From positions 1-64,000 of IMG/VR virus record IMGVR_UViG_3300017763_000002: DNA of 64,000 nucleotides. One strand, 5' to 3'. Positions within the stretch are counted from its first letter, which is position 1. Every line of letters starts with the position of its first letter. The notes below the pieces were generated by a model. The model did not search any database, was not told the DNA's origin, and saw only the letters and a list, made by a program, of their open reading frames with translations. The position numbers were made by a program, and so were the translations under genes. Below, in pieces: positions 1 through 53,805 of this stretch.

Positions 1-174
1 GCAGATCCAATGTCCAAGGTTTGCCTTGACCAACACGAACTCCATCCCGACAAGTTTCCGCTCGGCAGTACTTTTGAGTCATTCGATGAAGTCTTAGATG
101 ACATCATTTCAGACTTGACAAGATTGCAAGATGAGCGTAGAATAGAGGCATCTTTTCAATCAGCACAACTATAA
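1..174 (+). CDS. partial hypothetical protein (5' end outside window)
   Basis: Frame 1 is open from base 1 to TAA at 172-174 (ADPMSKVCLDQHELHPDKFPLG...QSAQL) and is co-oriented with the next gene. Confidence 0.5.
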   Translation, partial: ADPMSKVCLDQHELHPDKFPLGSTFESFDEVLDDIISDLTRLQDERRIEASFQSAQL

Positions 175-185
175 CACAAAAAATT

Positions 186-389
186 ATGCAAGTATACGAC
201 ACACCCGAAGCAATTGATATGTTCAGATTAACCGCTCTTAAAGGAGCTTTAAAGATGGAGGTTCTTGGTATGACTCGAAGAGGTCAATCAGCTTATTCAA
301 TTGTAAAACAAGAGCTTGGACTTAAAGGCAACAAGAAATCTGTACTCACAAAACTAGAACAAATCATAGAGAACGCCAAAAATGGGTAA
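186..389 (+). CDS. small hypothetical phage protein, 67 aa
   Basis: ORF track; plausible amphipathic helical sequence within the early gene block. Confidence 0.7.
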   Translation: MQVYDTPEAIDMFRLTALKGALKMEVLGMTRRGQSAYSIVKQELGLKGNKKSVLTKLEQIIENAKNG

Positions 390-561
390 GAAAAACAGAG
401 AACGAGGAGTCCCAAGTCAAGAACAGCACTTGGATTTATATAAAAAAGCAAAGTTAAATTCTCACACAGGAGCTAAGCCCCTTGTGGCACACATTAACAA
501 CCCCAATGTCATGGTCACACAAAAGGTGAGAAAAGCACAAGAGGCACGAAAAAAGTCTTGA
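382..561 (+). CDS. basic hypothetical protein, 59 aa (not in ORF track)
   Basis: ATG 382 to TGA 559-561, MGKKNRERGVPSQEQHLDLYKK...QEARKKS; fills the gap between two genes; the stop lies inside the next -35 box. Confidence 0.55.
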   Translation: MGKKNRERGVPSQEQHLDLYKKAKLNSHTGAKPLVAHINNPNVMVTQKVRKAQEARKKS

Positions 562-586
562 CTTTACATACCACATTTGAGATAAT
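558..586 (+). promoter_or_regulatory. sigma70-type early promoter (leaderless)
   Basis: TTGACT-17nt-GATAAT with TG extension; ATG 593 is 6 nt downstream. Confidence 0.8.
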
Positions 587-592
587 TATATC

Positions 593-862
593 ATGTTAGA
601 TTATATTAGAGCAAACTGCGAGTTACCACCTCTTGAAGATCACCCCACTTACGACAAAGATTCTGATATGTGGGAGTTATACTTTGAAGAACTTTTACCT
701 TCTTGGTATGTAAAAAGTGAAGGAGAACATCCCGAACTAATTACCCTTCACTTTGAAACTGAGGGCGAAGCCGTAGAAATTTTACACCAACTACCAACAA
801 TCCAAAATGAAAGGATAGCTTATGAAACTACTGAGCAAAATCAAGAACCTGTTCTCTCCTAA
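593..862 (+). CDS. acidic hypothetical protein, 89 aa
   Basis: ORF track; own promoter; overlaps the next ORF. Confidence 0.7.
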   Translation: MLDYIRANCELPPLEDHPTYDKDSDMWELYFEELLPSWYVKSEGEHPELITLHFETEGEAVEILHQLPTIQNERIAYETTEQNQEPVLS

Positions 863-1052
863 GTACCAAGTGGTATATACCACTGAAGACGGAAGGACAG
901 AGCGTTATACCATCAATCGCCCGCAACACGATTACGAGTTTGGCAACAATACGGAAGGTCGTAATGTTGTTGGGTTTCGTGCTTTTTGTCATAACCGAGG
1001 AGGAATTCGTTCTTTTAGGTATGACCGAGTGAAAGCTTTAGCTAAGGTATAA
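822..1052 (+). CDS. stand-alone WYL-like domain protein, 76 aa
   Basis: C-terminal GFRAFCHNRGGIRSFRYDRV resembles the WYL signature (hxAhCxxRxxxRxFRhDRI). Confidence 0.55.
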   Translation: MKLLSKIKNLFSPKYQVVYTTEDGRTERYTINRPQHDYEFGNNTEGRNVVGFRAFCHNRGGIRSFRYDRVKALAKV

Positions 1053-1054
1053 CA

Positions 1055-1171
1055 ATGAAAACCACCGCACAAATCAAAGCTCGTATTCGTGAGCTAGGCT
1101 ATGAATTAATGCAAGCCGAAATTGCTGACAGCTATTGCGAAAATTTTGTATCGAAAAGACAGGAGCATAAC
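1055..1171 (+). CDS. 38-aa hypothetical protein (not in ORF track)
   Basis: ATG 2 nt after the upstream stop; MKTTAQIKARIRELGYELMQAEIADSYCEKFCIEKTGA. Confidence 0.45.
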
Positions 1172-1250
1172 TTGCTTCTCGAAAAGCTTTACAAGCTCGA
1201 AAAACGAGTGTTTTAAATACTTTCATAACTTGTTCGAACAAATGCAGCTC

Positions 1251-1289
1251 GCCCCCATCCTTATTGCTAGGGTGGGGGCTTTGTTGTTG
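1251..1289 (+). terminator. intrinsic terminator
   Basis: GCCCCCATCCT-7nt loop-AGGGTGGGGGC stem (one G-U pair) followed by TTTGTTGTT. Confidence 0.7.
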
Positions 1290-1356
1290 GTAGTCAAGGC
1301 TTTGTGAAATTTTCACCCTGCCGGATTTTTGCAAATCCTTGCCGGACAACGACTTA
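1280..1356. repeat. 77-bp double-dyad element, copy A
   Basis: Two YAA-N4-TTG-N5-CAA-N4-TTR dyads start at 1280 and 1332 (52 bp apart) around a 27-bp A-tract/GC core. Confidence 0.75.
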
Positions 1357-1393
1357 GGCACTGAAAAAAATGTATTTATTAGTCATTTTATGC

Positions 1394-1421
1394 TTGCACT
1401 TTGTTTGTCTTCTGTCATAAT
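1394..1421 (+). promoter_or_regulatory. sigma70-type early promoter (leaderless)
   Basis: TTGCAC-16nt-CATAAT with TG extension; ATG 1429 is 7 nt downstream. Confidence 0.7.
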
Positions 1422-1428
1422 TATATAC

Positions 1429-1662
1429 ATGAAGATTAATGATAACAATCCACCATTCGACCCAAACGCAGAAGATGCAGTGCATGCTATCTTGGATGTT
1501 CTTAACGAAATGTTTATTCAACCTGCCTACAACGCAGGCGAGATTGACTCAGAAGATGAAGAAGTTCTCTTCAACATTCTTGGTGCAATGAAGATCATCG
1601 GGCAAAAAGCAAGAGCTTACGAAATTATAGAAGATCAAGATTCTTCCCTTTATCGTAATTAA
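1429..1662 (+). CDS. acidic hypothetical protein, 77 aa (start refined from 1339)
   Basis: MKINDNNPPFDPNAEDAVHAIL...; the start fits the promoter position. Confidence 0.7.
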   Translation: MKINDNNPPFDPNAEDAVHAILDVLNEMFIQPAYNAGEIDSEDEEVLFNILGAMKIIGQKARAYEIIEDQDSSLYRN

Positions 1663-1666
1663 TTGC

Positions 1667-1695
1667 TTGACTTTTACTATATATTCACTTATACT
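1667..1695 (+). promoter_or_regulatory. sigma70-type promoter
   Basis: TTGACT-17nt-TATACT; A-rich leader without an SD to ATG 1735. Confidence 0.75.
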
Positions 1696-1734
1696 TATAT
1701 TATAACAATCGAAAATCCTAAACTTAAAAAAAAT

Positions 1735-2532
1735 ATGTTAGATACAACTCAAGAAACCCCTCGTCTTAACCTCCGCATTTGCGGTAATCGCTCATCCATT
1801 GTTGATATGGACGCTGTTCGCAGAGTACCAACTCCGCAACCAACCAACAGATGGAAACCAATCCCGCACTCAAAAGTTGTAGATGTTACTCGCAACAATC
1901 TTGAAGATAAAGGTTTTGAGATTCTCAATGAATGTCACAATGTCACCAAAGGCGGTGAGCATTACTTTGGAATGTTTCAAGTTAATCATGCAGACCTTTC
2001 CGACAATGGCGGTGAGCGTGGTTGTGTAGTTGGCATGAGAAATTCACATGACAAACTTTTCGCAGCAGGTTTGTGTGCAGGTGACGCTCCATTTATTTGC
2101 GACAATCTCATCTTTCACAATGAAGTTGTTTTCACTCGCAAGCATGTCGGAGATGTAAACAAAGAACTCGTAGATCGAGTGCAAAAGATCACCGAGTATC
2201 TCATCCCAATGTGGACTCGCCAAAACGATAGAGTTGCATCTTACAAAGAGGTGGCACTCAATGATCGTGAAGCCCAACATCTTATTTTCGATGTTTACGA
2301 GGCAGGAATCAAGACCAATCTTATTGGCAAATCCCTTCCTACCCAAGCGTGGGAGCAATGGAAAAGTTCCGATCACAAAGTCTTTCAAGATCGTAACCTC
2401 AATTCGCTTTACAACGCTTTTACCGAAGTGAGCAAAGGACGCAATGTCATGCACTTGCCCAAAAGATCAGAAATCTTTCACAATGCTTTTGATCCTGTAG
2501 CAGGAGTAGAGTCTTTCGAGCTTGTAGCTTAA
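1735..2532 (+). CDS. DUF932 family protein (start refined from 1663)
   Basis: PTPQPTNRWKPIPH and MRNSHDKLFAAGLCAGDAPFICDNL match the DUF932 NSHD...AG...VC.N pattern. Confidence 0.7.
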   Translation: MLDTTQETPRLNLRICGNRSSIVDMDAVRRVPTPQPTNRWKPIPHSKVVDVTRNNLEDKGFEILNECHNVTKGGEHYFGMFQVNHADLSDNGGERGCVVGMRNSHDKLFAAGLCAGDAPFICDNLIFHNEVVFTRKHVGDVNKELVDRVQKITEYLIPMWTRQNDRVASYKEVALNDREAQHLIFDVYEAGIKTNLIGKSLPTQAWEQWKSSDHKVFQDRNLNSLYNAFTEVSKGRNVMHLPKRSEIFHNAFDPVAGVESFELVA

Positions 2533-2562
2533 TTTTAACACTAAAAAAAGGAAATCATAATT

Positions 2563-2790
2563 ATGAAATGCCGTAATCTCAACGAAGTATTAGACTCACG
2601 CAAGGGACGATTTGTATCTGTCCTCCTTAAAAACGGACTAAAGCGAGAGCTTTATTCCGCTAAGGTTCACGATTACAACTCCAAGGTTGTCCGCTTCAAG
2701 GACACCAATGGAGGTGAGCGTAGGGTCAGCAGATCTAAGATTGTAAGGGTAAAGGTCGCAGAGCGTGCCTTTAAGCGTACAAGAGCTTAG
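2563..2790 (+). CDS. basic hypothetical protein, 75 aa (small beta-barrel-like)
   Basis: ORF track; followed by a terminator. Confidence 0.7.
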   Translation: MKCRNLNEVLDSRKGRFVSVLLKNGLKRELYSAKVHDYNSKVVRFKDTNGGERRVSRSKIVRVKVAERAFKRTRA

Positions 2791-2806
2791 GTCAAATACC
2801 TAACCT

Positions 2807-2839
2807 AAAAAGCCCCTTGTGAAAGCAAGGGGTTTTTTT
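2807..2839 (+). terminator. intrinsic terminator
   Basis: CCCCTTGT-GAAA-GCAAGGGG hairpin followed by T7, preceded by an A-run. Confidence 0.9.
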
Positions 2840-2840
2840 G

Positions 2841-2917
2841 TATCTTGTTGTCTTGGAGTGACTTGCGAAATTTCCGGCCCGTAAATTTTTCGCAAGTTAT
2901 TGATAGTGATAGGTTTA
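2841..2917. repeat. 77-bp double-dyad element, copy B
   Basis: Dyads start at 2841 and 2893 (52 bp apart); core CGAAATTTCCGGCCCGTAAATTTTTCG. Confidence 0.7.
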
Positions 2918-2934
2918 TGTGTGAAAAAAAAGTG

Positions 2935-2962
2935 TTGACACGCTCGGTCTATATGTTATTAT
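2935..2962 (+). promoter_or_regulatory. sigma70-type early promoter (leaderless)
   Basis: A-tract, then TTGACA-16nt-TATTAT with TG extension; ATG 2969 is 6 nt downstream. Confidence 0.8.
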
Positions 2963-2968
2963 ATAGAT

Positions 2969-3385
2969 ATGATTAGAACAAAACCAGACTCTCGCTACGA
3001 CATCGACTATGACCGAAAGGTGTTCGTATACAAAAACCTTCATAAGAATTGCTGGAGCGTTCGCCAGGACGGATTAGTCAAGGCTCATTCGGATGGATCT
3101 CCAATTTCTATATATTCAGCAACAATGAAGGTGAACCAAAAAGGTCGTGAGCGTGTGATTCGTGAAAAGAGCAAGAATGTTCATGCCGGTGTCTCAGGCT
3201 ATCTTCGCTTTTACCTAGACACTGTGTGGCACGGATGGGTTGACATGGTCGAGATAACATACAATCCTTACAAGTATGAGTCTTTTGTACATGTCCAAAA
3301 CAAAAAGCCAAGATGGTTTGCCAGTATTTGCAAACTTTATCAAGATAAAGTTCTAGTTGAGGCTATTCGGGGCTTGACAGATTAA
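2969..3385 (+). CDS. conserved phage hypothetical protein, 138 aa
   Basis: VYKNLHKNCWSVR...GRERVIREKSKNVHA, a motif I recall from a widespread uncharacterised phage family. Confidence 0.75.
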   Translation: MIRTKPDSRYDIDYDRKVFVYKNLHKNCWSVRQDGLVKAHSDGSPISIYSATMKVNQKGRERVIREKSKNVHAGVSGYLRFYLDTVWHGWVDMVEITYNPYKYESFVHVQNKKPRWFASICKLYQDKVLVEAIRGLTD

Positions 3386-3402
3386 TTTATTTTCATTAGT
3401 AT
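3374..3402 (+). promoter_or_regulatory. sigma70-type early promoter (leaderless)
   Basis: TTGACA-17nt-TAGTAT; ATG 3409 is 6 nt downstream; the -35 lies in the last codons of the upstream gene. Confidence 0.8.
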
Positions 3403-3408
3403 AGTATC

Positions 3409-4146
3409 ATGATTAAAACAACACTTCTCACATCAGGCAATCAAAAAATTCTCAAAGGAGAAAAAATGGGTTACATTACGAAAGGCATTCATCTTGCCCC
3501 AGCAAATCTTGCGGGCTACGAAGTTTGTCGTTGGCGTTCCAAAGGATGCACAATGTCTTGTCTTAACACAGCAGGTCGTGGTCAAATGAATAGCGTTCAG
3601 CAATCACGCATTGCAAAGACAAAGTTATTCTTTGAGCGTAAAGCTGAGTTTATGACTAAGCTATGCAAAGAGATTACAAGCACTTACCGCTCGGCTCTCA
3701 AGAAAGAAATGCAAGCTGTTTTCCGTCTCAATCTTACAAGTGACATTTCATGGGAAGATGTTCAGCTATTTAAAGGCTCAAACATTTTTAAGCACTTTGA
3801 GGGCATTCAGTTCTACGATTATACTAAGTCATTCAAAAGAATGTGTTCTTTCCTCGATAAGCCGTTCATCAAGGGCGAAGCAAAGTTTCCTTCCAATTAT
3901 CATTTAACCTTCTCTCGTAGTGAAAACAACGACAAGAAGTGTGAGATGGTTCTTGCTATGGGTGGCAATGTTGCGGTTGTATTTCGCAATCAGTTGCCTA
4001 AGACTTGGAAAGGTTACGAGGTTGTCAATGGTGATGATACTGACTTGCGTTTTCTTGACAGCCGTGGTGTTGTTGTTGGTCTTATTGAAAAGGGCATGGC
4101 AAAGAAAGATTCCACAGGCTTTGTGCAAGAAGGTATTGACTCCTAA
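3409..4146 (+). CDS. GP88 family phage protein (radical-SAM-like Cys triad)
   Basis: VCRWRSKGCTMSCLNTAGRG, FRLNLTSDI, FYDYTK, YHLTFS, GDDTDLRFLD and KGMAKKD motifs typical of GP88. Confidence 0.8.
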   Translation: MIKTTLLTSGNQKILKGEKMGYITKGIHLAPANLAGYEVCRWRSKGCTMSCLNTAGRGQMNSVQQSRIAKTKLFFERKAEFMTKLCKEITSTYRSALKKEMQAVFRLNLTSDISWEDVQLFKGSNIFKHFEGIQFYDYTKSFKRMCSFLDKPFIKGEAKFPSNYHLTFSRSENNDKKCEMVLAMGGNVAVVFRNQLPKTWKGYEVVNGDDTDLRFLDSRGVVVGLIEKGMAKKDSTGFVQEGIDS

Positions 4147-4163
4147 TCTCAATTTGATATAAT
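4136..4163 (+). promoter_or_regulatory. sigma70-type early promoter (leaderless)
   Basis: TTGACT-16nt-TATAAT; ATG 4170 is 6 nt downstream. Confidence 0.85.
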
Positions 4164-4169
4164 TAAGTT

Positions 4170-4379
4170 ATGAAAAAGACAAAATTTATCTTAACATTAT
4201 CTAACGATAGCATTCCCATCATAGCGGAGGTTTGTGCCTTGAGGGTATTAGAAAGTGATGAAAAAGTATTGGGAAGAGCTTGTGTTATGGAAAATGTAAA
4301 AAAGAAAAACTTTATCGACATAACAAGAAAAGCCAATTATAAAGAAGGAAAGTTATATGCCCAGGCAGACTATGTATAA
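4170..4379 (+). CDS. hypothetical protein, 69 aa
   Basis: ORF track; own promoter; last gene of the rightward early block. Confidence 0.7.
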   Translation: MKKTKFILTLSNDSIPIIAEVCALRVLESDEKVLGRACVMENVKKKNFIDITRKANYKEGKLYAQADYV

Positions 4380-4411
4380 ATAGCCAAATAGAGCAAATAA
4401 ATAGCCAAATA
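4378..4411. repeat. 13-bp direct repeat AAATAGCCAAATA x2
   Basis: Exact copies at 4378-4390 and 4399-4411, 21 bp apart. Confidence 0.7.
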
Positions 4412-4438
4412 CATTATTTTTTTAATCATATCAATCTG

Positions 4439-4515
4439 TAAGTCGTTGAAGTTCAATGGCTTGCAGATTTTTTGCCCCGTCAGTTTTTTGCAAACTGTTG
4501 GCTATCAGCGTTTTA
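4439..4515. repeat. 77-bp double-dyad element, copy C
   Basis: TAAGTCGTTG-AAGTT-CAATGGCTTG, 27-bp core, CAAACTGTTG-GCTAT-CAGCGTTTTA; sits at the convergence of the two early blocks. Confidence 0.8.
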
Positions 4516-4517
4516 GG

Positions 4518-4598
4518 TTAACGCTTTAGAGTAGGATAGAATAATTCTTTGATGCCACCGATCACGCACGAAACGAGAAAAATTGTAATCAATTCCAT
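4518..4598 (-). CDS. 26-aa hydrophobic micropeptide (not in ORF track)
   Basis: MELITIFLVSCVIGGIKELFYPTLKR; the start overlaps the upstream stop (TAATG). Confidence 0.55.
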   Translation of the reverse strand: MELITIFLVSCVIGGIKELFYPTLKR

Positions 4599-4813
4599 TA
4601 CTTAGATAGTTCTAGCTTGCGGTTGTCAAGGATGAATCCGATTACTTTATTGACTCTTTCGATTGACTTGTCAATGGTTCTTTGGGCGTGTTCGCTCGCT
4701 TCCATCTCCTGAAGTAGATTACGCAAGAACTTGAGTTCTCCGTTTGTCGTTGCTAATTCCATCGCTGTTTTGTCAACAAGCTTTGGATCTTCTAGTTTTT
4801 CGATTAATTCCAT
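4598..4813 (-). CDS. helical hypothetical protein, 71 aa
   Basis: ORF track; leaderless promoter upstream. Confidence 0.75.
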   Translation of the reverse strand: MELIEKLEDPKLVDKTAMELATTNGELKFLRNLLQEMEASEHAQRTIDKSIERVNKVIGFILDNRKLELSK

Positions 4814-4819
4814 GATATT

Positions 4820-4847
4820 ATTATGAATGAATGAGTTTAAAAGTCAA
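4820..4847 (-). promoter_or_regulatory. sigma70-type early promoter (leaderless)
   Basis: TTGACT-16nt-CATAAT; ATG 4813 is 6 nt downstream. Confidence 0.8.
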
Positions 4848-4850
4848 GAC

Positions 4851-5312
4851 TTATTTAAGCTCCCAAAGTTCGGGATGAGAATCCCAATGGAAGACAAACC
4901 TGCCTTGATTTTGTTGTGCAAAGTCAATCTCGAATTGAGAAGGCTCAACACCAAAACGCAAACGAAAGTTTGCTTCCGAAGCTGAAATGCCAAGCTCTTT
5001 TTTAAGCTTAACAACTTCGCCCATGCGTGGACGAGCAAGCTTATTTTTGAAAGTCTTTTCAAGCTTTGGAGCTTTTGGGGCAAAGGTTGTGGAGTCAACT
5101 TGGAAACGCTCAGGAGCAGATTCATTCCAAAGAGTAGCAACTTCGGCAGGGTCTTTGCCGTTTGCAACAAGCTTGTGAGCCATTGACTCAAGACGCTTTT
5201 GGGAGTCAACCCCACGAGTCCAAACTGAGTGGTCGTCAGCGTAGTTGTAGAACCAGTCATGTCCTTGCAAGGCGTTTATAAAGTTGGAGAGAGTATTATC
5301 AATTTTAATCAT
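4851..5312 (-). CDS. hypothetical protein, 153 aa
   Basis: ORF track; LQGHDWFYNYADDHSVWTRG resembles a recurrent phage motif (HDW.Y.YSDD..VW..G). Confidence 0.75.
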   Translation of the reverse strand: MIKIDNTLSNFINALQGHDWFYNYADDHSVWTRGVDSQKRLESMAHKLVANGKDPAEVATLWNESAPERFQVDSTTFAPKAPKLEKTFKNKLARPRMGEVVKLKKELGISASEANFRLRFGVEPSQFEIDFAQQNQGRFVFHWDSHPELWELK

Positions 5313-5318
5313 ATCTAT

Positions 5319-5346
5319 ATATTAACAAGTTAAGGGTGAAAGTCAA
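5319..5346 (-). promoter_or_regulatory. sigma70-type early promoter (leaderless)
   Basis: TTGACT-16nt-TAATAT; ATG 5312 is 6 nt downstream. Confidence 0.8.
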
Positions 5347-5420
5347 GCTTTATTTTTTAAAACAAAGGCTAAAAGTATTTTTTCTCTTTCTGTGAGTTGT
5401 GTTTTATTAATCTTAATCAT
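5343..5420 (-). CDS. 25-aa micropeptide, LTEREKIL family copy 1 (not in ORF track)
   Basis: MIKINKTQLTEREKILLAFVLKNKA; own leaderless promoter; paralog at 7442-7507. Confidence 0.65.
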   Translation of the reverse strand: MIKINKTQLTEREKILLAFVLKNKA

Positions 5421-5426
5421 ACATAC

Positions 5427-5455
5427 AATGTAGCACATAAAACCTCAAAAGTCAA
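5427..5455 (-). promoter_or_regulatory. sigma70-type early promoter (leaderless)
   Basis: TTGACT-17nt-TACATT; ATG 5420 is 6 nt downstream. Confidence 0.75.
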
Positions 5456-5468
5456 GAAAAACTTTAAA

Positions 5469-5537
5469 CTATTTTATTGCACAATCCTTTTTTTGACGGG
5501 GTATTTTTTTTGCAAACCCTTGCCAGTCAATGATTTA
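5469..5537. repeat. half element (one dyad) plus 29-bp repeat
   Basis: CTATTTTATTGCACAATCCTTTTTTTGAC at 5469-5497 is identical to 6641-6669; dyad CAAACCCTTG-CCAGT-CAATGATTTA at 5513-5537. Confidence 0.75.
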
Positions 5538-5621
5538 CCAAGGTTTTTCTTCGGTCATTATATCTTTCCACATGATGTAGAATACGATAATCCAAGGAGA
5601 GAATAGGATAAGTTCGATCAT
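5535..5621 (-). CDS. 28-aa single-TM micropeptide (not in ORF track)
   Basis: MIELILFSPWIIVFYIMWKDIMTEEKPW; starts 4 nt after the upstream stop; its TAA is the outer half-site of the dyad. Confidence 0.6.
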   Translation of the reverse strand: MIELILFSPWIIVFYIMWKDIMTEEKPW

Positions 5622-5625
5622 GATG

Positions 5626-5841
5626 TTATTTTTTGCGTTGTTCGTGCAGTATCACTTGAAACTTCTTGCGAGCTTCTTGCACTGCATTGAGAGCGTCAAG
5701 AATAGCCATTCCTTGCGTCATTGTGCCTTGCCATTCGGGCGAGTTTGATACTTCAGCTAAGAAGTTGAGGTTGCCCTCGGCTTTAGATAGAGCTAGACCC
5801 ATGTCTAGTTCTGGGAAGTCCATTGCTTTCGATTCGTTCAT
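5626..5841 (-). CDS. helical hypothetical protein, 71 aa
   Basis: ORF track; leaderless promoter upstream. Confidence 0.75.
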   Translation of the reverse strand: MNESKAMDFPELDMGLALSKAEGNLNFLAEVSNSPEWQGTMTQGMAILDALNAVQEARKKFQVILHEQRKK

Positions 5842-5847
5842 ATTATG

Positions 5848-5876
5848 AATATAGTTTAAAAGGTTTTAAAAGTCAA
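5848..5876 (-). promoter_or_regulatory. sigma70-type early promoter (leaderless)
   Basis: TTGACT-17nt-TATATT; ATG 5841 is 6 nt downstream. Confidence 0.75.
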
Positions 5877-6154
5877 GCTTTTATTTCTGTTATTCTGTTG
5901 ATGTACCATTCGGCATTATCGCCTTCTTTACCTATAACGCCACGCTTGAATTGGACTTTGGTTTGTAGCTTGTTTACGAGAGCCTTTACCTTTCTTCTTA
6001 CTTCGTGCTTGTCTTCAGCTTGAATTTCGAAGATGTTGTTTGTCATGTGCGTATCAATGAATGAATTTGTATTAGTGTTCCACAAAGGAAGTTTTTCCTC
6101 TCGTTCTATAGAGGAGACATGAACATTTGCGATGAATTTTTTATTCTTTAACAT
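5873..6154 (-). CDS. hypothetical protein, 93 aa (start refined from 6268)
   Basis: MLKNKKFIANVHV...EIKA; starts 4 nt after the stop of 6159-6359. Confidence 0.7.
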   Translation of the reverse strand: MLKNKKFIANVHVSSIEREEKLPLWNTNTNSFIDTHMTNNIFEIQAEDKHEVRRKVKALVNKLQTKVQFKRGVIGKEGDNAEWYINRITEIKA

Positions 6155-6158
6155 TTTA

Positions 6159-6359
6159 TTATTGAAAGATGACATTGAAACGAAACTGATTGAGACCTTC
6201 GTCTCGCATGATTCTATTGAGATGAGATTCGCTTGAAGCGGTGCGAACTCGTGGGCGATCGTTGCCATCTGAGTCGATGCCTTGATCGAAGATTTTGACA
6301 GCCCAATGGGTTGACCACTTTTTTATTCTTACTTGTGTAACTTTGTTATTCTTAATCAT
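6159..6359 (-). CDS. hypothetical protein, 66 aa
   Basis: ORF track; leaderless promoter upstream. Confidence 0.7.
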   Translation of the reverse strand: MIKNNKVTQVRIKKWSTHWAVKIFDQGIDSDGNDRPRVRTASSESHLNRIMRDEGLNQFRFNVIFQ

Positions 6360-6365
6360 ATTTAC

Positions 6366-6394
6366 AATCTAATCTATTTTTTACTAAAAGTCAA
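6366..6394 (-). promoter_or_regulatory. sigma70-type early promoter (leaderless)
   Basis: TTGACT-17nt-TAGATT; ATG 6359 is 6 nt downstream. Confidence 0.8.
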
Positions 6395-6582
6395 GCTTTT
6401 TTTACATTATTTTTCATTGCAATTTTGTTTTGCAAATCCCATTCGGAAAGCCATGCCTTATTTTGTTGCAACAAGCTTTCGGCTTGCTCGCGAACTACGG
6501 CATTTTTCTCGCTGAGAATGATATCAACTAGGTCGTTGATGTCGGCTTTAACTTTTTTGATGAGTTGAATTCCTTTATCCAT
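6391..6582 (-). CDS. hypothetical protein, 63 aa
   Basis: ORF track; own promoter; ends KKA-TGA inside the next -35 box. Confidence 0.65.
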   Translation of the reverse strand: MDKGIQLIKKVKADINDLVDIILSEKNAVVREQAESLLQQNKAWLSEWDLQNKIAMKNNVKKA

Positions 6583-6588
6583 ATATAT

Positions 6589-6617
6589 AATCTAAGGGAA
6601 AAACCGGAGTAAGTCAA
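6589..6617 (-). promoter_or_regulatory. sigma70-type early promoter (leaderless)
   Basis: TTGACT-17nt-TAGATT; ATG 6582 is 6 nt downstream. Confidence 0.8.
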
Positions 6618-6640
6618 CTTTTATTTCACTTACCTTTTAG

Positions 6641-6709
6641 CTATTTTATTGCACAATCCTTTTTTTGACCCTGTGGATTTTTTGCAAATCCTTGATTATG
6701 TGTTACTTA
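6641..6709. repeat. half element (one dyad) plus 29-bp repeat
   Basis: 29-bp exact repeat of 5469-5497; dyad CAAATCCTTG-ATTAT-GTGTTACTTA at 6685-6709, whose TTA is the stop of 6707-7015. Confidence 0.75.
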
Positions 6710-7015
6710 GAACACAAGTGATTCTATGTTTTGATTAGGCACGGCAAACCAGTCGGATGGTTGAATTTTATGACCATTTAAGACAGGCTCAAAGTTGACC
6801 TGATGAACTCCGGCATTGACTATTCCGTTTACTCGCTCGCGAGTGGTTGGTGTGTTCCAGCCAGCAAGTGACCATATGACGAAACCGCTTGCGTCTCGTT
6901 TCACAATGGCGTTGCCATGTAGCCAAACGGTGTTTCCGTCTGTGCGTGTGTTGCCAACGGTCAAAGGTTGGCGGGATTCAAAGGCTGATTTGATTTGTTG
7001 TGTTACTTTTCTCAT
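6707..7015 (-). CDS. conserved phage hypothetical protein, 102 aa
   Basis: VWLHGNAIV...SLAGWNTPTTRERVNGI resembles a recurrent phage early-protein motif (LHGN.IA...GW.T.TT..RLN). Confidence 0.75.
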   Translation of the reverse strand: MRKVTQQIKSAFESRQPLTVGNTRTDGNTVWLHGNAIVKRDASGFVIWSLAGWNTPTTRERVNGIVNAGVHQVNFEPVLNGHKIQPSDWFAVPNQNIESLVF

Positions 7016-7033
7016 TTTATATTTATTGAAGGT

Positions 7034-7219
7034 TTACATGTCGAATTGACTATGGTAGCCATAGTCGATATCCTCTTGATCGGGGAATTCATTTAAGGCA
7101 AGCAAATCGTCAAGTTCGATTTGGGCGTTTATTACTTCCTGCTGAGCTTGAACATGTCCAAGTTCGGCAATCGGCGTTTGAGTCTTGATGATCTCTTTTA
7201 GTTCTGTTATTCTATCCAT
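7034..7219 (-). CDS. hypothetical protein, 61 aa (start refined from 7279)
   Basis: MDRITELKEIIKTQTPIAELGHVQAQQEV...; the start overlaps the upstream stop. Confidence 0.65.
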   Translation of the reverse strand: MDRITELKEIIKTQTPIAELGHVQAQQEVINAQIELDDLLALNEFPDQEDIDYGYHSQFDM

Positions 7220-7409
7220 GATTTGAGATGATTGGCAATTCTGCTTGGCGAAGGTCGCTGGTCTTGTAATCCCAAACAACTTCGTTTTGTTGTATGTTGC
7301 GAGCGATCTCCATTGCTTGAGCGTGGGTCTTTGCGTTGTCTACGATTTTACCAAAGAGTCTTACATCGAACCAATTGGTAAAGTTTGGGTTTTTATCTAC
7401 ATTAATCAT
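7212..7409 (-). CDS. hypothetical protein, 65 aa
   Basis: ORF track; NPNFTNWFDVRLFGKIVDNAKT; promoter upstream. Confidence 0.7.
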   Translation of the reverse strand: MINVDKNPNFTNWFDVRLFGKIVDNAKTHAQAMEIARNIQQNEVVWDYKTSDLRQAELPIISNHG

Positions 7410-7417
7410 ATTAGTAT

Positions 7418-7445
7418 ATTCTATATATTAGAGGGTGAAAGTCAA
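7418..7445 (-). promoter_or_regulatory. sigma70-type early promoter (near-leaderless)
   Basis: TTGACT-16nt-TAGAAT; ATG 7409 is 8 nt downstream; shares TTGACTTTCACCCT with the promoter at 5346. Confidence 0.8.
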
Positions 7446-7507
7446 GCCTTTTTATTAAGGATTTTAGTGATGATGAGGATTTTTTCGCGTTCTGTGAGAT
7501 TTGTCAT
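7442..7507 (-). CDS. 21-aa micropeptide, LTEREKIL family copy 2 (not in ORF track)
   Basis: MTNLTEREKILIITKILNKKA; paralog of 5343-5420. Confidence 0.6.
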   Translation of the reverse strand: MTNLTEREKILIITKILNKKA

Positions 7508-7545
7508 TTTTATCTTTGTTATATTGTTTATCTTATTATGTATAC

Positions 7546-7574
7546 AACATACCACACCAATCGACAAAAGTCAA
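7546..7574 (-). promoter_or_regulatory. sigma70-type early promoter
   Basis: A-tracts, then TTGACT-17nt-TATGTT; A-rich leader to ATG 7507. Confidence 0.7.
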
Positions 7575-7613
7575 GTATTATTTTACTTTTTTTTACTTTT
7601 TTTTATTATTACC

Positions 7614-7690
7614 TAAGTCTTTGTGTATCCGGCACTTGTGGAAATTCGACAGGGCAAAAATCTTGCAAACTCTTGCCTATTAACGACTTA
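7614..7690. repeat. 77-bp double-dyad element, copy D
   Basis: TAAGTCTTTG-TGTAT-CCGGCACTTG, 27-bp core, CAAACTCTTG-CCTAT-TAACGACTTA; the terminal TTA is the stop of 7688-7912. Confidence 0.75.
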
Positions 7691-7912
7691 GAAGTCGTCC
7701 ATTAGTAGCTCGTCTAGTGCATAGGTGTCAAGCTCAGGGTCTTGGTAGTCTGCACCGTCGGGCGTGCTAGTAGTGCCGCATTCTACTAGATAGTTAGCTA
7801 GATCTTTATAGTGCACGAAACGCCTAGCAAGCTTGTATAAGCCTTCGTCGTTGCCTAGCCATAGGGCTACATTCCAAGTAACCCAGTTAGACCAACCATT
7901 ATACCCTTCCAT
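7688..7912 (-). CDS. conserved phage protein, 74 aa (YNGW.N..TWNVALW family)
   Basis: GYNGWSNWVTWNVALWLGNDEGLY is a recurrent phage motif. Confidence 0.8.
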   Translation of the reverse strand: MEGYNGWSNWVTWNVALWLGNDEGLYKLARRFVHYKDLANYLVECGTTSTPDGADYQDPELDTYALDELLMDDF

Positions 7913-8073
7913 TACTTCGAGGCGTTAACGGGGAAAAGACCATAACGACGAGAGCCGTCATTGTGTGCTATGCGAGAGCGTAGAAGTCGCTCGGCATCAC
8001 GCTGACGCATTGCTATGGATTCGACAACCCAAACGGCACCCGCTTGGTTGAGTATAGATTTAAGTATGTACAT
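7912..8073 (-). CDS. 53-aa hypothetical protein (not in ORF track)
   Basis: MYILKSILNQAGAVWVVESIAMRQRDAERLLRSRIAHNDGSRRYGLFPVNASK; TAATG coupling to the downstream gene. Confidence 0.55.
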   Translation of the reverse strand: MYILKSILNQAGAVWVVESIAMRQRDAERLLRSRIAHNDGSRRYGLFPVNASK

Positions 8074-8087
8074 TATTAGCCTTTCGT

Positions 8088-8384
8088 TTAGGATTCAAAG
8101 ATGTCACGCATTGCACCGCTTACGCAATTCATATCTGTTAGATTTTCGTCACTATCAAAGTCATCGTCTTCTTCTGCTTCGACTGCATCGAGAGATTCAA
8201 ACTCTCCTTCGATATCACGCTCGGATGCGTGTTGTATGCCATGCTCAAGAGTAAACTCCTCGTTTGCGATTTCTTCCTCAAGGTCATTGAGTAAGTCAGC
8301 AAACTTGCCTGTGAGTTTGTTGTTGTTCTCATTGGCGAGTTCAACGGCTTTAGCGATTAGAGAGATATTATTATCATTGTTCAT
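8088..8384 (-). CDS. very acidic hypothetical protein, 98 aa (start refined from 8420)
   Basis: D/E-rich (EAEEDDDFDSDE); the start fits the promoter at 8393-8420. Confidence 0.7.
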   Translation of the reverse strand: MNNDNNISLIAKAVELANENNNKLTGKFADLLNDLEEEIANEEFTLEHGIQHASERDIEGEFESLDAVEAEEDDDFDSDENLTDMNCVSGAMRDIFES

Positions 8385-8392
8385 AGTTATGT

Positions 8393-8420
8393 ATATTATA
8401 TTATATTGAAGTAATTGCAA
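8393..8420 (-). promoter_or_regulatory. sigma70-type early promoter (near-leaderless)
   Basis: TTGCAA-16nt-TAATAT; ATG 8384 is 8 nt downstream. Confidence 0.65.
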
Positions 8421-8433
8421 GAAAAAAGTGCGA

Positions 8434-8547
8434 TTATGCGAAAGTTTTTTTATGCTTTGCCTTGCGTGGAAGCATCTTATTCTTTAGCTTGTGAGGTCTT
8501 GCCTTAGTGAAGACCATCGGTATTCTAACTTTAATTTTCTTATTCAT
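8434..8547 (-). CDS. 37-aa very basic peptide (not in ORF track)
   Basis: MNKKIKVRIPMVFTKARPHKLKNKMLPRKAKHKKTFA; own leaderless promoter. Confidence 0.6.
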   Translation of the reverse strand: MNKKIKVRIPMVFTKARPHKLKNKMLPRKAKHKKTFA

Positions 8548-8553
8548 AGATAC

Positions 8554-8582
8554 AATCTATCAAACAAATGCCTAAAAGTCAA
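8554..8582 (-). promoter_or_regulatory. sigma70-type early promoter (leaderless)
   Basis: TTGACT-17nt-TAGATT; ATG 8547 is 6 nt downstream. Confidence 0.8.
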
Positions 8583-8613
8583 CAAAAACATTCAACTGTT
8601 TTACTGCACTATA

Positions 8614-8638
8614 CCCCCACCCCCGGTGACCCTACCCC
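8614..8638 (-). other. putative G-quadruplex motif at the early/late boundary
   Basis: The minus strand reads GGGG-TA-GGG-TCACC-GGGGG-T-GGGGG, four G-runs with short loops in an AT-rich genome. Confidence 0.6.
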
Positions 8639-8754
8639 TTTTGTGAATTAGAATCTCTAAACAGATCAGAAAATCCGGCGGGGGGTGGTATTTTTCAATA
8701 TCGAAAACAAAATTAAAATTATACAAATTAGCTTGGCCCAAAAAAATCCACGGG

Positions 8755-8759
8755 GTGTA
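8755..8759 (+). promoter_or_regulatory. GTGTA late-type promoter motif
   Basis: GTGTA-9nt-ATG 8769. Confidence 0.6.
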
Positions 8760-8768
8760 TTTACATAC

Positions 8769-9023
8769 ATGCCCGACGAACAAGACATGATATGGCTAAA
8801 AGGAATGCAATTAAAATTAAAAGGATGCGAGGCTAAAAACAGCGATATGAAATTTTTAATTAAATTAATGCAAGACGAATTAAACAAAACAAAACAATAC
8901 ATTCATTCAGAATGCCGCCGACCTGACTTTGAGTATTCAAAGCACGTTGACATGGCATTGTCGTGGACACCTAGAAAAAGAAAAAGAATAGTTACTCAAA
9001 TAAAAAATGAAATTAAAACGTAA
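8769..9023 (+). CDS. hypothetical protein, 84 aa (start refined from 8685)
   Basis: MPDEQDMIWLKG...; start placed by the GTGTA motif; overlaps the next gene. Confidence 0.55.
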   Translation: MPDEQDMIWLKGMQLKLKGCEAKNSDMKFLIKLMQDELNKTKQYIHSECRRPDFEYSKHVDMALSWTPRKRKRIVTQIKNEIKT

Positions 9024-9816
9024 AATATTGATTATGGGGTTGCCCGGTGCAGGTAAGACCTCTCTCGCTGAACTTTTAGTGCCTGCCTTAGGCGCTGTAT
9101 GGTTTAACGCTGACGCAATTCGTCAGGAAATACATAAAGATCTTGGATTTTCTGAGGAAGATAGAATAGAACACGCTCGTAGATTGGGAAAATTAAGTGA
9201 CTGGGCTGCCATGGGGGGTAACTTTGTGGTTTCAGATTTTTGCTGCCCAACAAAAGAAACTCGAGAAGTTTTTGAAGCTGATTTTACCATATGGGTGGAC
9301 AGGATTATGGAGGGCCGTTACGAAGATACAAACAAAATGTTTGAACGCCCTATGAATTACGACATTAGACTAACAGACGGCAGTCCAGAAGAATGGCTCG
9401 GAAAGGTTCTTAAAAAAATATACGAAACTGAAAAATGGGACAATCAAGCTCCGACAGCGCTTTTAATTGGAAGATACCAACCGTTTCACATTGGGCATAA
9501 AACGCTGGTTAATGAGGCTATTAAAAGAGTCGGTCAATGCTGTATTGCACTAAGAGATGTTGCAGGTACAGACGAAAGCAATCCTTATGATTTTGAAAAA
9601 GTTAAACTTGAAATCGAGAAAGCTTGCCTTGAGTTCGGAGATAAAATAAAAGTCGTTGAGCTTCCAAATATCACAGACGTATTTTATGGAAGGGGCGTAG
9701 GATATAATATCGAACAACTTGAACTTAGTAAAGAAATGCAGGATGTTTCAGCAACAAAGATTAGATCGGGACAAATTGGCCAAGACGGCAAACCTACTGG
9801 CAAGAGACCTGAGTAG
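9007..9816 (+). CDS. cysC: adenylylsulfate (APS) kinase fused to a HIGH-motif nucleotidyltransferase domain
   Basis: P-loop GLPGAGKT and DAIR...DLGFSEEDRIEHARR as in CysC; C-terminal IGRYQPFHIGH and VSATKIRS of the cytidylyltransferase/NMNAT-like fold. Confidence 0.85.
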   Translation: MKLKRKILIMGLPGAGKTSLAELLVPALGAVWFNADAIRQEIHKDLGFSEEDRIEHARRLGKLSDWAAMGGNFVVSDFCCPTKETREVFEADFTIWVDRIMEGRYEDTNKMFERPMNYDIRLTDGSPEEWLGKVLKKIYETEKWDNQAPTALLIGRYQPFHIGHKTLVNEAIKRVGQCCIALRDVAGTDESNPYDFEKVKLEIEKACLEFGDKIKVVELPNITDVFYGRGVGYNIEQLELSKEMQDVSATKIRSGQIGQDGKPTGKRPE

Positions 9817-9893: not shown

Positions 9894-10265
9894 ATGAAAA
9901 ATTCACTAATAACTAACTTCTTGGGCGAGCCCAGCTTGCTCAGCGCGATGGATTCAATTATTGATTACAGTGTTGACTCCTATAAATATAGAACAACTCT
10001 AGAAAAAAAAGACAATGGGTATATCGTAACCGCTCAAGTTCCTGGAATGTCAAAAGAAGACATCTCTATTAAATTAGAAGATTCCGTGCTCAAAATAACT
10101 GGAGAAAAACAAGTTAATGAAAGCATGACTACATCTATTAATAAAGACTTCACTATAAGTAGTAGTATTAATACAAGCAAAATCGAAGCTAAGGTTGAAA
10201 ATGGTATACTTAACGTTTTTATTCCTCAAAAAGAAAATAAATCAAAAAAAATTCCAATTAATTGA
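9894..10265 (+). CDS. small heat shock protein (Hsp20/alpha-crystallin), start refined from 9876
   Basis: AQVPGMSKEDISIKLEDSVLKITGEK and IEAKVENGILNVFIP. Confidence 0.9.
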   Translation: MKNSLITNFLGEPSLLSAMDSIIDYSVDSYKYRTTLEKKDNGYIVTAQVPGMSKEDISIKLEDSVLKITGEKQVNESMTTSINKDFTISSSINTSKIEAKVENGILNVFIPQKENKSKKIPIN

Positions 10266-53791: not shown

Positions 53792-53805
53792 CATAGTAAT
53801 ATACA

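What the first reader, a model, noticed from the sequence alone, without database searches (positions are those of the whole stretch)
382..7507. Stop codons built into the next gene's -35 box
Seen in sequence: five early ORFs end at the TGA inside TTGACT of the downstream promoter (382-561, 5343-5420, 5873-6154, 6391-6582, 7442-7507). Four of them therefore end Lys-Ala-stop (AAR GCT TGA CT). Two more have the -35 inside their last codons (L-T-D at 3385, I-D-S at 4146). Inference: genes are inserted as promoter-to-promoter cassettes through the shared AAGCTTGACTTT sequence, with the promoter supplying the stop codon. This is a compact gene-capture logic that complements the dyad element.
Basis: partly seen in the sequence, partly recalled or inferred. 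Interest (0 to 1): 0.6.

Follow-up and report, generated by a model that had tools for sequence, protein, structure and literature searches.

The report
Stop codons inside downstream promoter boxes
In the early region of this marine jumbo phage, genes are packed so tightly against the promoter of the next gene that the TGA inside the promoter's TTGAC box often serves as their stop codon; this is real and family-wide, but it is a compact variant of a known way in which phages shuffle promoter-bounded genes.

Summary
All five ORFs stop at the TGA inside TTGACT. Four end Lys-Ala-stop and one ends Lys-Ser-stop. Two more ORFs read through the -35 box.

The larger pattern is a stereotyped module, TTGAC(T/A)-N16-18-TAnnnT-N6-ATG, which predicts leaderless mRNAs. 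There are about 15 such modules in window 1-8600 and about 25 more at 163-205 kb of the 204.9-kb genome. Relatives from marine viromes yield about 590 further distinct contexts.

Across the family, the -35 TGA is the single commonest stop position: 80 of 317 junctions, or 40 of 166 clusters. The Ala or Ser tail is simply the promoter consensus (A/T-rich, G-2, C-1) read in frame. Homologs elsewhere carry their own TAA 2-20 nt upstream, so the state is labile; in one case a 1-nt indel switches it.

Promoter junctions break synteny about three times more often than promoterless ones. Recombinant joints sit at the -35 edge, the -10, the ATG and the first codons. One conserved gene pair differs by an exact 35-nt promoter indel whose TGA replaces an ATGA stop.

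It works like the PeSL modules of T4-type phages but lacks their stem-loop and Shine-Dalgarno sequence. Transcription starts are predicted, not measured.

The parts
382..561 (+). ORF A, 59 aa, ends K-K-S then the TGA of TTGACT (558-563)
   Evidence: Family present in 9-11 relatives. L110 has the same TCT TGA. L107 reads through (G-L-T-S-TAG). Others have their own TAA/TGA without a promoter.
558..595 (+). Promoter module P558: -35 TTGACT 558-563, 17-nt spacer, -10 GATAAT 581-586, 6 nt, ATG 593 of the 89-aa gene
   Evidence: geometry. Conserved in L110 and L107.
5343..5420 (-). Small ORF B, 25 aa (MIKINKTQLTEREKILLAFVLKNKA), ends N-K-A then the TGA of TTGACT (5346-5341)
   Evidence: Member of a conserved 20-31-aa LTEREKIL family.
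5310..5346 (-). Promoter module P5346: -35 5346-5341, 16-nt spacer, -10 TAATAT 5324-5319, ATG 5312 of the 153-aa gene
   Evidence: In L081 the same gene has a different promoter. An X8 contig drives it from a module like the one at 2935.
5873..6154 (-). ORF C, 93 aa, ends I-K-A then the TGA of TTGACT (5876-5871). It has no promoter of its own and starts 4 nt after the stop of 6359-6159.
   Evidence: Of 29 homologs, L124 and L135 end K-N-S-TGA inside TTGACT before a different gene; most of the others shown carry their own TAA a few to about 16 nt before a -35 box. Absent from L081/L134 between 'caataataaa' and 'gcTTGAC'.
5839..5876 (-). Promoter module P5876: -35 5876-5871, 17-nt spacer, -10 TATATT 5853-5848, ATG 5841 of the 71-aa gene
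   Evidence: In L108 and L110 that ATG lies inside longer coding sequence with no promoter.
6391..6582 (-). ORF D, 63 aa, ends K-K-A then the TGA of TTGACT (6394-6389)
   Evidence: L110 has the same KKA-TGA but a different spacer and downstream gene. L155 has one extra T, giving a TAA at -6. L081 and L084 end KK-TAA.
6357..6394 (-). Promoter module P6394: -35 6394-6389, 17-nt spacer, -10 TAGATT 6371-6366, ATG 6359 of the 66-aa gene
   Evidence: L134 carries the same module and gene behind a different upstream gene.
7442..7507 (-). Small ORF E, 21 aa (MTNLTEREKILIITKILNKKA), ends K-K-A then the TGA of TTGACT (7445-7440)
   Evidence: L081 and L082 homologs end KKK-TAA / KRK-TAA. L107 ends KKA-TGA.
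7407..7445 (-). Promoter module P7445: -35 7445-7440, 18-nt spacer, -10 GAATAT 7421-7416, ATG 7409 of the 65-aa gene
   Evidence: Homologs of the gene occur with many different promoters or with none.
2969..3385 (+). 138-aa gene (Pfam Phage_L5_gp82) that reads through the -35 TTGACA (3374-3379) as G-L-T-D and stops at a TAA in the spacer
   Evidence: L108 and L110 stop at a TAA 3 nt before the box. L148, L116, L136 and L134 end I-A-TGA inside TTGACA.
3374..3411 (+). Promoter module P3374: -35 TTGACA, -10 TAGTAT 3397-3402, ATG 3409
3409..4146 (+). 245-aa gene (Pfam GP88). Its codons I-D-S (ATT GAC TCC) contain the -35 TTGACT 4136-4141; its stop is the TAA at 4144-4146.
   Evidence: Relatives end IDS-TGA inside a TTGACA 7 nt further on, or are coupled to the next gene by ATGA.
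4136..4172 (+). Promoter module P4136: -35 TTGACT, 16-nt spacer, -10 TATAAT 4158-4163, ATG 4170
4811..4847 (-). Promoter module P4847. The upstream gene 5312-4851 stops at a TAA 3 nt before the box.
5418..5455 (-). First promoter module of an operon, after a dyad repeat; no ORF ends in it. Sequence TTTTTCTTGACTTTT.
6580..6617 (-). First promoter module of an operon, after a dyad repeat. Sequence AAAAGTTGACTTAC.
8545..8582 (-). Promoter module in front of the 37-aa gene 8547-8434
1394..1431 (+). Promoter module (TTGCAC -35) after a terminator and dyad repeat; ATG at 1429
2935..2971 (+). Promoter module (TTGACA) after a terminator and dyad repeat; ATG at 2969

Best explanation
The early region of this roughly 205-kb marine phage is built from minimal promoter modules of about 35 bp: TTGAC(T/A), a 17-nt spacer, TAnnnT, 6 nt, then ATG. 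The predicted transcription start is the A of the start codon, so the mRNAs would be leaderless and need no ribosome-binding site. A module must sit at a fixed distance from its gene, and intergenic DNA has been squeezed to nothing, so the upstream ORF ends just before, on, or just inside the -35 box. TTGAC always contains TGA in one frame, so that TGA is the default, last-exit stop. The residues before it are the promoter's upstream consensus (A/T-rich tract, G at -2, C at -1) read as Lys/Asn/Ile followed by Ala or Ser. The state flips easily between a TAA a few nt upstream, the TGA in the box, and read-through into the spacer, by point mutations and 1-nt indels in A-runs. The modules are also the seams at which genes are gained, lost and re-paired between relatives, as with the PeSL elements of T4-type phages.

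Shown: the geometry, the family-wide frequency, the consensus, the lability, the excess of synteny breaks at promoters, and exact module indels.

Inferred: promoter activity with a host sigma-70-type polymerase, early timing, leaderless translation, and the recombination mechanism.
For: Geometry:
- 22 of 60 sites matching TTGAC[AT]-N16-18-TAnnnT in the genome have their first ATG 6-7 nt after the -10 box, against 3.4% expected.
- About 40 modules carrying ORFs were found in the genome. There are 593 unique contexts once the relatives are added.

Frequency:
- The stop offset relative to the -35 box peaks at +1 (80 of 317), followed by -6 (35) and -11 (24).
- The commonest distance between the last sense codon and the next ATG is 34 nt, the minimum possible with the stop inside the box (71 cases).

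Consensus: A/T-rich at -10 to -4, G at -2 and C at -1, also in 275 promoters with no ORF nearby.

Lability:
- D: W AAAAAAGCTTGA against L155 AAAATAAAGCTTG.
- 2969-3385: TAA at -6 in L108 and L110 against read-through in W and L107.
- 14 of 166 junction clusters hold more than one state.

Shuffling seams:
- Neighbour retention is 36% at promoterless junctions, 12% at promoter junctions and 6% at terminator-plus-promoter junctions.
- The spacer travels with the downstream gene in 16 pairs and with the upstream gene in 4. The left edge of similarity falls at the -35 box in 10 of 15 pairs.
- The D junction is a three-way chimera.
- An exact 35-nt module indel lies between a conserved gene pair, and its TGA replaces the ATGA stop in frame. 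Five gene pairs occur in both coupled and promoter-spaced states.
- Metagenome contigs carry alternative joints at 6389, 5327, 4816, 6350 and 5833.

TTGC-type boxes, which lack the TGA, rarely have an ORF running into them (7 of 74, none in the TGA frame), against 113 of 345 for TTGA-type boxes.
Against: - There are no transcription-start data. The RNA evidence is metatranscriptome contigs only, which cannot show 5' ends.
- The host is unknown.
- In this genome alone, TGA-frame use is not significantly above one third (8 of 17, p=0.17).
- The family counts include related junctions. Clustering reduces this pseudo-replication but does not remove it.
- Non-coding spacers diverge fast, so alignment ends pile up at the -35 box and the ATG even without recombination.
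- The shared identity at joints is short (6-15 nt), so the recombination mechanism is open.
- Metagenome contigs could be chimeric, although the shared words are shorter than an assembly k-mer.
Confidence: 0.68

Rival explanations
1. AAGCTTGACTTT is a dedicated recombination site through which promoter-to-promoter cassettes are captured, and the promoter-supplied stop is a designed part of the capture logic.
For: - Three exact copies and one near copy of AAGCTTGACT sit at gene ends in 5341-7449.
- The D gene plus AAAAAAGCTTGACT is joined to three different downstream parts.
- L119 and L150 share TAAAGCTTGACC... behind unrelated genes.
- The left edge of similarity falls at the -35 box in 10 of 15 pairs.
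Against: - The word is not conserved across modules or relatives: TTTTTCTTGACT, CTCTTGACA, AAAGTGTTGACA and others occur.
- Most homologs keep their own TAA.
- Gene C has no promoter of its own, and the same genes occur with and without promoters.
- Joints also lie at the -10 box, the ATG and the first codons.
- No site-specific recombinase was noticed among the early-region ORFs scanned.
Confidence: 0.12
2. This is chance plus compaction only. TTGAC contains TGA, AT-rich DNA is dense in stops, and ORFs packed against promoters hit the TGA one time in three. On this view there is no selection for it and promoters play no role in gene shuffling.
For: - Genome-wide, 8 of 17 is not different from one third.
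- A continuum of stop positions runs from -43 to +39.
- The excess of three-frame stops is trivially explained by the real stops.
Against: - After clustering, the family shows 40 of 81 (p=0.002).
- The modal inter-gene distance is exactly the minimum, 34 nt.
- TTGC-type boxes are almost never overlapped by an ORF.
- Promoter junctions lose their neighbour about three times more often than promoterless ones.
- There is an exact 35-nt module indel.
Confidence: 0.15
3. The overlap has a regulatory function. On read-through transcripts, ribosomes terminate 31 nt before an ATG that has no ribosome-binding site. The downstream gene is then translated only from its own leaderless mRNA, or termination there modulates the downstream promoter.
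For: - Module-proximal genes have no Shine-Dalgarno sequence, whereas promoterless internal genes have AAGGA-like ones, for example upstream of 822, 1055 and 2563.
- The geometry is fixed.
Against: - There is no direct evidence for it.
- The same genes work in relatives with stops at many other offsets, so no particular offset seems to be required.
Confidence: 0.05

Closest known systems
PeSL (promoter-early stem-loop) cassettes of T4-type phages (Arbiol et al. 2010, PMC2839356; Comeau et al. 2014, PMC4122927)
   Same: - Near-consensus sigma-70-type early promoters with an AT-rich tract upstream of the -35 box.
- Repeated many times in a hyperplastic region of small ORFans.
- The stop codon of the upstream gene lies in the AT-rich edge of the cassette.
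- The cassettes mark indels and replacements between relatives.
- In PeSLs, crossovers were mapped at several places inside the cassette (between the -10 box and the ATG, in the AT-rich tract, in the loop). Joints are scattered in the same way here.
   Different: - The five junction modules have no stem-loop (z-scores -0.9 to +1.0).
- There is no Shine-Dalgarno sequence: the ATG sits 6-7 nt after the -10 box.
- The module is about 35 bp rather than about 100 bp.
- The stop often lies inside the -35 hexamer rather than upstream of it.
- The phage is not T4-like by its terminase: the best hits in the phage collection are Bacillus, Clostridium and Microcystis phages at 24-27% identity.
- Mini-circles were not tested.
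ATGA-type overlapping stop/start (translational coupling) in phage operons (established knowledge)
   Same: One short word serves two genes with zero intergenic DNA. In this family the two solutions are interchangeable for the same gene pair.
   Different: Here the stop is shared with a transcription signal (the -35 box), not with the next start codon. The two genes are uncoupled by about 31 nt and by a new transcript.
Leaderless mRNAs from promoters placed 7 nt before the ATG (for example lambda cI from PRM; common in actinobacteria and their phages, and in Thermus phages). Recalled from my own knowledge, not tested here.
   Same: The -10 box lies 6-7 nt before the ATG and there is no ribosome-binding site.
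   Different: Here it is the rule for a whole early region and for a whole family of marine phages. It comes with a recurrent ATGATTAA (M-I-K) start.
Integron gene cassettes (attC/attI with an integrase)
   Same: Arrays of small, mostly unknown genes that are gained and lost as units at a repeated boundary sequence.
   Different: Integron cassettes are promoterless, are bounded by structured attC sites and are moved by a tyrosine recombinase. None of these features was seen here.

Membership tests
Sigma-70-type promoter | -35 TTGACA-like and -10 TATAAT-like hexamers 16-18 bp apart | tested here: met
   TTGAC(A/T), spacer of 17 nt (about 70%) or 16 nt, and TAnnnT.
Sigma-70-type promoter | Initiates transcription with the host holoenzyme | not testable with these tools
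   Only metatranscriptome contigs lie over the genes. They carry no 5'-end information.
Leaderless mRNA gene | Start codon at or within 1-2 nt of the transcription start, with no Shine-Dalgarno sequence | tested here: inconclusive
   The geometry is met: the ATG lies 6-7 nt after the -10 box in 22 of 60 sites against 3.4% expected. The transcription start itself was not measured.
PeSL cassette | Strong sigma-70-like early promoter with an AT-rich tract upstream of the -35 box | tested here: met
   (logo); definition from PMC2839356.
PeSL cassette | Stable stem-loop (terminator or attenuator) within or overlapping the promoter | tested here: not met
   eight internal modules fold no better than shuffled sequence. 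Strong hairpins exist only at operon ends (1250-1280, 2810-2836), separate from the modules.
PeSL cassette | Shine-Dalgarno sequence and start codon at the 3' end | tested here: not met
   only 6-7 nt lie between the -10 box and the ATG.
PeSL cassette | Concentrated in hyperplastic ORFan regions and associated with indels between relatives | tested here: met
   mostly unknown small proteins; breaks and indels at modules.
PeSL cassette | Recombination between cassettes yields mini-circles | not testable with these tools
   This needs PCR on phage DNA.
Integron cassette array | attC recombination sites and an integrase | tested here: not met
   Repeats found in 1-9000 are promoters and a dyad element. 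No integrase appeared among the early-region ORFs scanned.

The most novel reading that the evidence does not exclude
The roughly 35-bp module is a self-sufficient, portable unit: a stop codon for whatever lies upstream, a promoter, and a leaderless start for whatever lies downstream. This would let a widespread family of marine jumbo phages insert, delete and re-pair small genes, or express newly arisen ORFs, without needing a ribosome-binding site, a terminator or spare intergenic DNA. Exchange would be guided by the shared -35/-10/ATGATTAA words. The exact 35-nt indel, in which the box TGA replaces an ATGA stop in frame, would be its signature.
Probability: 0.3. Interest if true: 0.65.

Novelty: new variant of a known kind. 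Interest (0 to 1): 0.47.

Why it matters
It shows how far a phage can compress gene boundaries. One hexamer acts as an RNA-polymerase contact for one gene and as the stop codon for the previous one, and the promoter's upstream consensus is translated into that protein's tail.

It also extends promoter-bounded modular shuffling, so far described for T4-type phages, to an unrelated and abundant marine jumbo-phage family. The version seen here is stripped down and leaderless.

In practice, annotators of such genomes should expect three things: genes starting at the transcript's first base, real 20-30-aa ORFs, and C-terminal Ala or Ser residues that are promoter-encoded and not conserved.

Tried and rejected
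- Nucleotide searches of the phage collection with 1-8400 found nothing, in both near and distant modes.
- PHROGs and Pfam give no function for the five ORFs.
- I tested whether the module carries stops in all three frames by design. The result was 47% against 35% in shuffles, but the excess is explained by the real stops of the upstream genes, so I rejected it as evidence.
- Raw BLAST alignment ends pile up at +6 and +35 relative to the -35 box. I rejected this as evidence of recombination because unconstrained spacers diverge faster than the box and the coding DNA. Only pairs with different flanking genes were used.
- My automatic gene calling mis-called 6359-6159 and the 21-aa ORF. I replaced it with hand-curated junctions and tblastn.
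- A high-depth X4 contig joins 7357>6346, 6395>5411 and 5488>7324. It matches only short promoter or start pieces and was not interpreted.
- No alternative genetic code was needed or used.

Full report
**What the window is**

The window is the first 64 kb of a single 204,906-bp contig with 35.8% G+C. It encodes a large terminase, a DNA polymerase, a Lon-type protease and a 5,895-aa ORF. It is therefore a jumbo phage.

There is no nucleotide match in the phage collection, and the nearest terminases there are only 24-27% identical. Hundreds of relatives exist in IMG/VR contigs. Near-identical DNA is present in marine and seawater metagenomes from many studies.

**Observation**

- 382-561 ends AAG TCT TGA.
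- 5420-5343, 6154-5873, 6582-6391 and 7507-7442 end AAR GCT TGA.

The two read-through cases are also as described: G-L-T-D at 3385 and I-D-S at 4146. TGA is a genuine stop here, because homologs of 3409-4146 use TGA or TAA at the same codon.

**The larger pattern**

Each of these TTGACT boxes belongs to a stereotyped module: TTGAC(T/A), 16-18 nt, TAnnnT, 6 (sometimes 7) nt, ATG. With a sigma-70-type polymerase the transcript would start at the A of the ATG, giving a leaderless mRNA.

In the whole genome, 22 of 60 promoter-like sites have their first ATG 6-7 nt after the -10 box, against 3.4% expected. The modules cluster at 163-205 kb on the + strand, continue through 1-4.4 kb, and fill 4.4-8.6 kb on the - strand. 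Promoterless internal genes, by contrast, have AAGGA-like ribosome-binding sites. Relatives keep the same design. Pooling the genome with 57 relatives' loci gives 593 distinct module contexts, 171 of which start M-I-K.

**How often the box supplies the stop**

Stop positions were measured from the first T of TTGAC.
- The upstream ORF's stop is at +1 (the box TGA) in 80 of 317 junctions. This is the largest single class.
- 85 ORFs read on into the spacer.
- 35 stop at -6 and 24 at -11.

After clustering homologous junctions, the counts are 40 at +1, 41 reading through and 85 stopping before the box. So 40 of 81 ORFs that reach the box use its TGA, against one third expected (p=0.002). For the window alone the figure is 5 of 7 (p=0.045), and for the genome 8 of 17 (p=0.17).

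The commonest distance from a last sense codon to the next ATG is 34 nt, the minimum possible. Boxes of the TTGC type, which lack the TGA, almost never have an ORF running into them.

**Why Lys-Ala**

The promoter consensus upstream of the box is A/T-rich at -10 to -4, G at -2 and C at -1. It holds even for the 275 modules with no ORF nearby. Read in the TGA frame, this gives NCT, mainly Ala or Ser. The observed last residues are A 33, S 29, G 8 and V 7.

The Lys is native. Homologs of D end ...VKK-TAA or ...CKK-TAA, and the small ORFs end in runs of K. So only Ala-stop is promoter-derived.

**Lability**

- D in L155 reads GTA AAA TAA AGC TTG, while the window reads GTA AAA AAA GCT TGA. One base in an A-run moves the stop from -6 into the box.
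- C ends K-N-S-TGA in L124 and L135 in front of a different gene. Most of the other homologs shown end with their own TAA a few to about 16 nt before a box.
- A ends TCT TGA in L110, reads through as G-L-T-S-TAG in L107, and has its own stop and no promoter in the others.
- 2969-3385 has a TAA at -6 in L108 and L110, reads through in the window and L107, and ends I-A-TGA inside TTGACA in more distant relatives.
- Fourteen of 166 junction clusters contain more than one state.

**Are the modules the seams of gene shuffling?**

From the window's point of view, the downstream neighbour is retained in relatives as follows:
- 72 of 200 cases at promoterless junctions;
- 28 of 230 at promoter junctions;
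- 8 of 133 at terminator-dyad-promoter junctions.

Per junction, the difference between promoterless and promoter junctions gives Mann-Whitney p=0.007.

Where the promoter spacer is shared with only one flank, it travels with the downstream gene in 16 pairs and with the upstream gene in 4. In 10 of 15 true pairs the similarity begins at the -35 hexamer; in the others it begins 6-20 nt upstream.

The D junction is a three-way chimera. Its left part matches L110, which then has a different spacer and gene. Its right part matches L134, which has a different upstream gene. The overlap between the two is AAAAAAGCTTGACTT.

A metagenome contig in run X8 joins the same D end, up to the last base of TTGACT, to 28 new bases and the ATG of 7409-7212. 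Other contigs diverge in the -10 region (5327), 3 nt before an ATG (4816), or just after the first codons (6350, 5833).

The clearest case concerns 3409-4146 and the gene that follows it in relatives (N-terminus containing YY[DE]SAE). This pair is either coupled as ...ACTC-ATGA, or separated by an exact 35-nt insert that runs from the first T of TTGACA to the base before the ATG. The box TGA then takes over from the ATGA stop in the same frame. Five gene pairs occur in both coupled and promoter-spaced states.

**Limits**

- Non-coding spacers diverge faster than the box and the coding DNA, so raw alignment ends cluster at the box and the ATG anyway. Only comparisons in which a flanking gene differs are informative.
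- The shared words at joints are 6-15 nt long. Homology-guided exchange cannot be told apart from random breaks that survive only if they keep an intact module and are later trimmed.
- No transcription start has been measured. Metatranscriptome contigs overlie 5635-5814, 6155-6297, 6809-7016, 7238-7389 and 8084-8239, but they cannot show 5' ends and may include DNA.

**Comparison with what is known**

The closest concept is the PeSL cassette of T4-type phages. These are sigma-70-like early promoters with an AT-rich upstream tract that holds the upstream stop codon. They are repeated in hyperplastic ORFan regions and mediate indels, with crossovers at several places inside the cassette.

The present modules work like that, but they fail two defining features. 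They have no stem-loop and no Shine-Dalgarno sequence. The phage is also not T4-like. The finding is therefore a new, minimal, leaderless variant of a known kind, not a member of the PeSL family. Integron cassettes are only a loose analogy.

**Verdict**

The stop-in-box arrangement is best seen as the end point of compaction around fixed-distance leaderless promoters, with the box TGA acting as the default stop. The modules, rather than the particular word AAGCTTGACTTT, are the seams of gene exchange.

Noticed in passing
window 1-8600 and genome 163,000-204,906 (+ strand): The whole early region uses leaderless promoter-ATG modules. 171 of 593 module genes in the family begin M-I-K (ATGATTAA...), which suggests a preferred initial transcribed or translated sequence, or repeated reuse of one gene start.
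   Followed up: partly
window 5343-5420(-), 7442-7507(-); L081 4238-4297, L082 6519-6578, L083 about 2249, L084 641-691: A conserved family of 20-31-aa ORFs has the pattern M..LTEREKIL, a hydrophobic stretch, then a Lys-rich tail. It is always placed between two tandem promoters. In L134 the same motif is the N-terminus of an 80-aa protein homologous to 5841-5626. The window's copy of that gene lacks the motif, so it looks 5'-truncated with a new promoter.
   Followed up: partly
window 1310-1341, 4469-4500, 5491-5522, 6663-6694, about 7650-7690: A repeated element of about 32-60 nt (TTTT.ACCC.G..GGATTTTTTGCAAATCCTTG) contains a short hairpin (GGATTT/AAATCC). It lies 55-70 nt upstream of the first promoter of each gene block. 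Its function is unknown; it may be a regulator binding site.
   Followed up: partly
window 1242-1290 and 2805-2840 (+): Strong GC-rich hairpins followed by T-runs (intrinsic terminators) end the two + strand gene blocks, each just before a dyad element and a promoter. Folding z-scores are -3.1 and -4.7.
   Followed up: partly
window 6154-5873 against L081 about 4810-4830: The 93-aa gene is absent from L081/L134 exactly between 'caATAATAAA' and 'gcTTGAC'. In the window it is flanked by AATAAA(A) on both sides, which looks like a microhomology-bounded indel next to the -35 box.
   Followed up: partly
window 18704-36391 (+): A single ORF of 5,895 aa.
   Followed up: no
window 9007-9816, 9894-10265, 51332-53806: Three auxiliary genes: a fusion with APS-kinase-like and cytidylyltransferase-like domains, an Hsp20 small heat-shock protein, and a Lon-type ATP-dependent protease.
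   Followed up: no
window 3409-4146, 2969-3385, 6707-7015: Early genes shared with very different phages. GP88 / 'Gp37/Gp68-like' matches pelagiphages, mycobacteriophages and Xanthomonas jumbo phages at 38-46% identity. The other two hit the L5 gp82 family and a Kyanoviridae Gp96-like family.
   Followed up: no
runs X1-X14; window 3300-8700: The phage or very close strains occur in marine or seawater metagenomes from more than ten studies. One holder (X5) is labelled with an organism name (coded), which might point to a host or a culture. Population variants differ by whole gene modules.
   Followed up: partly
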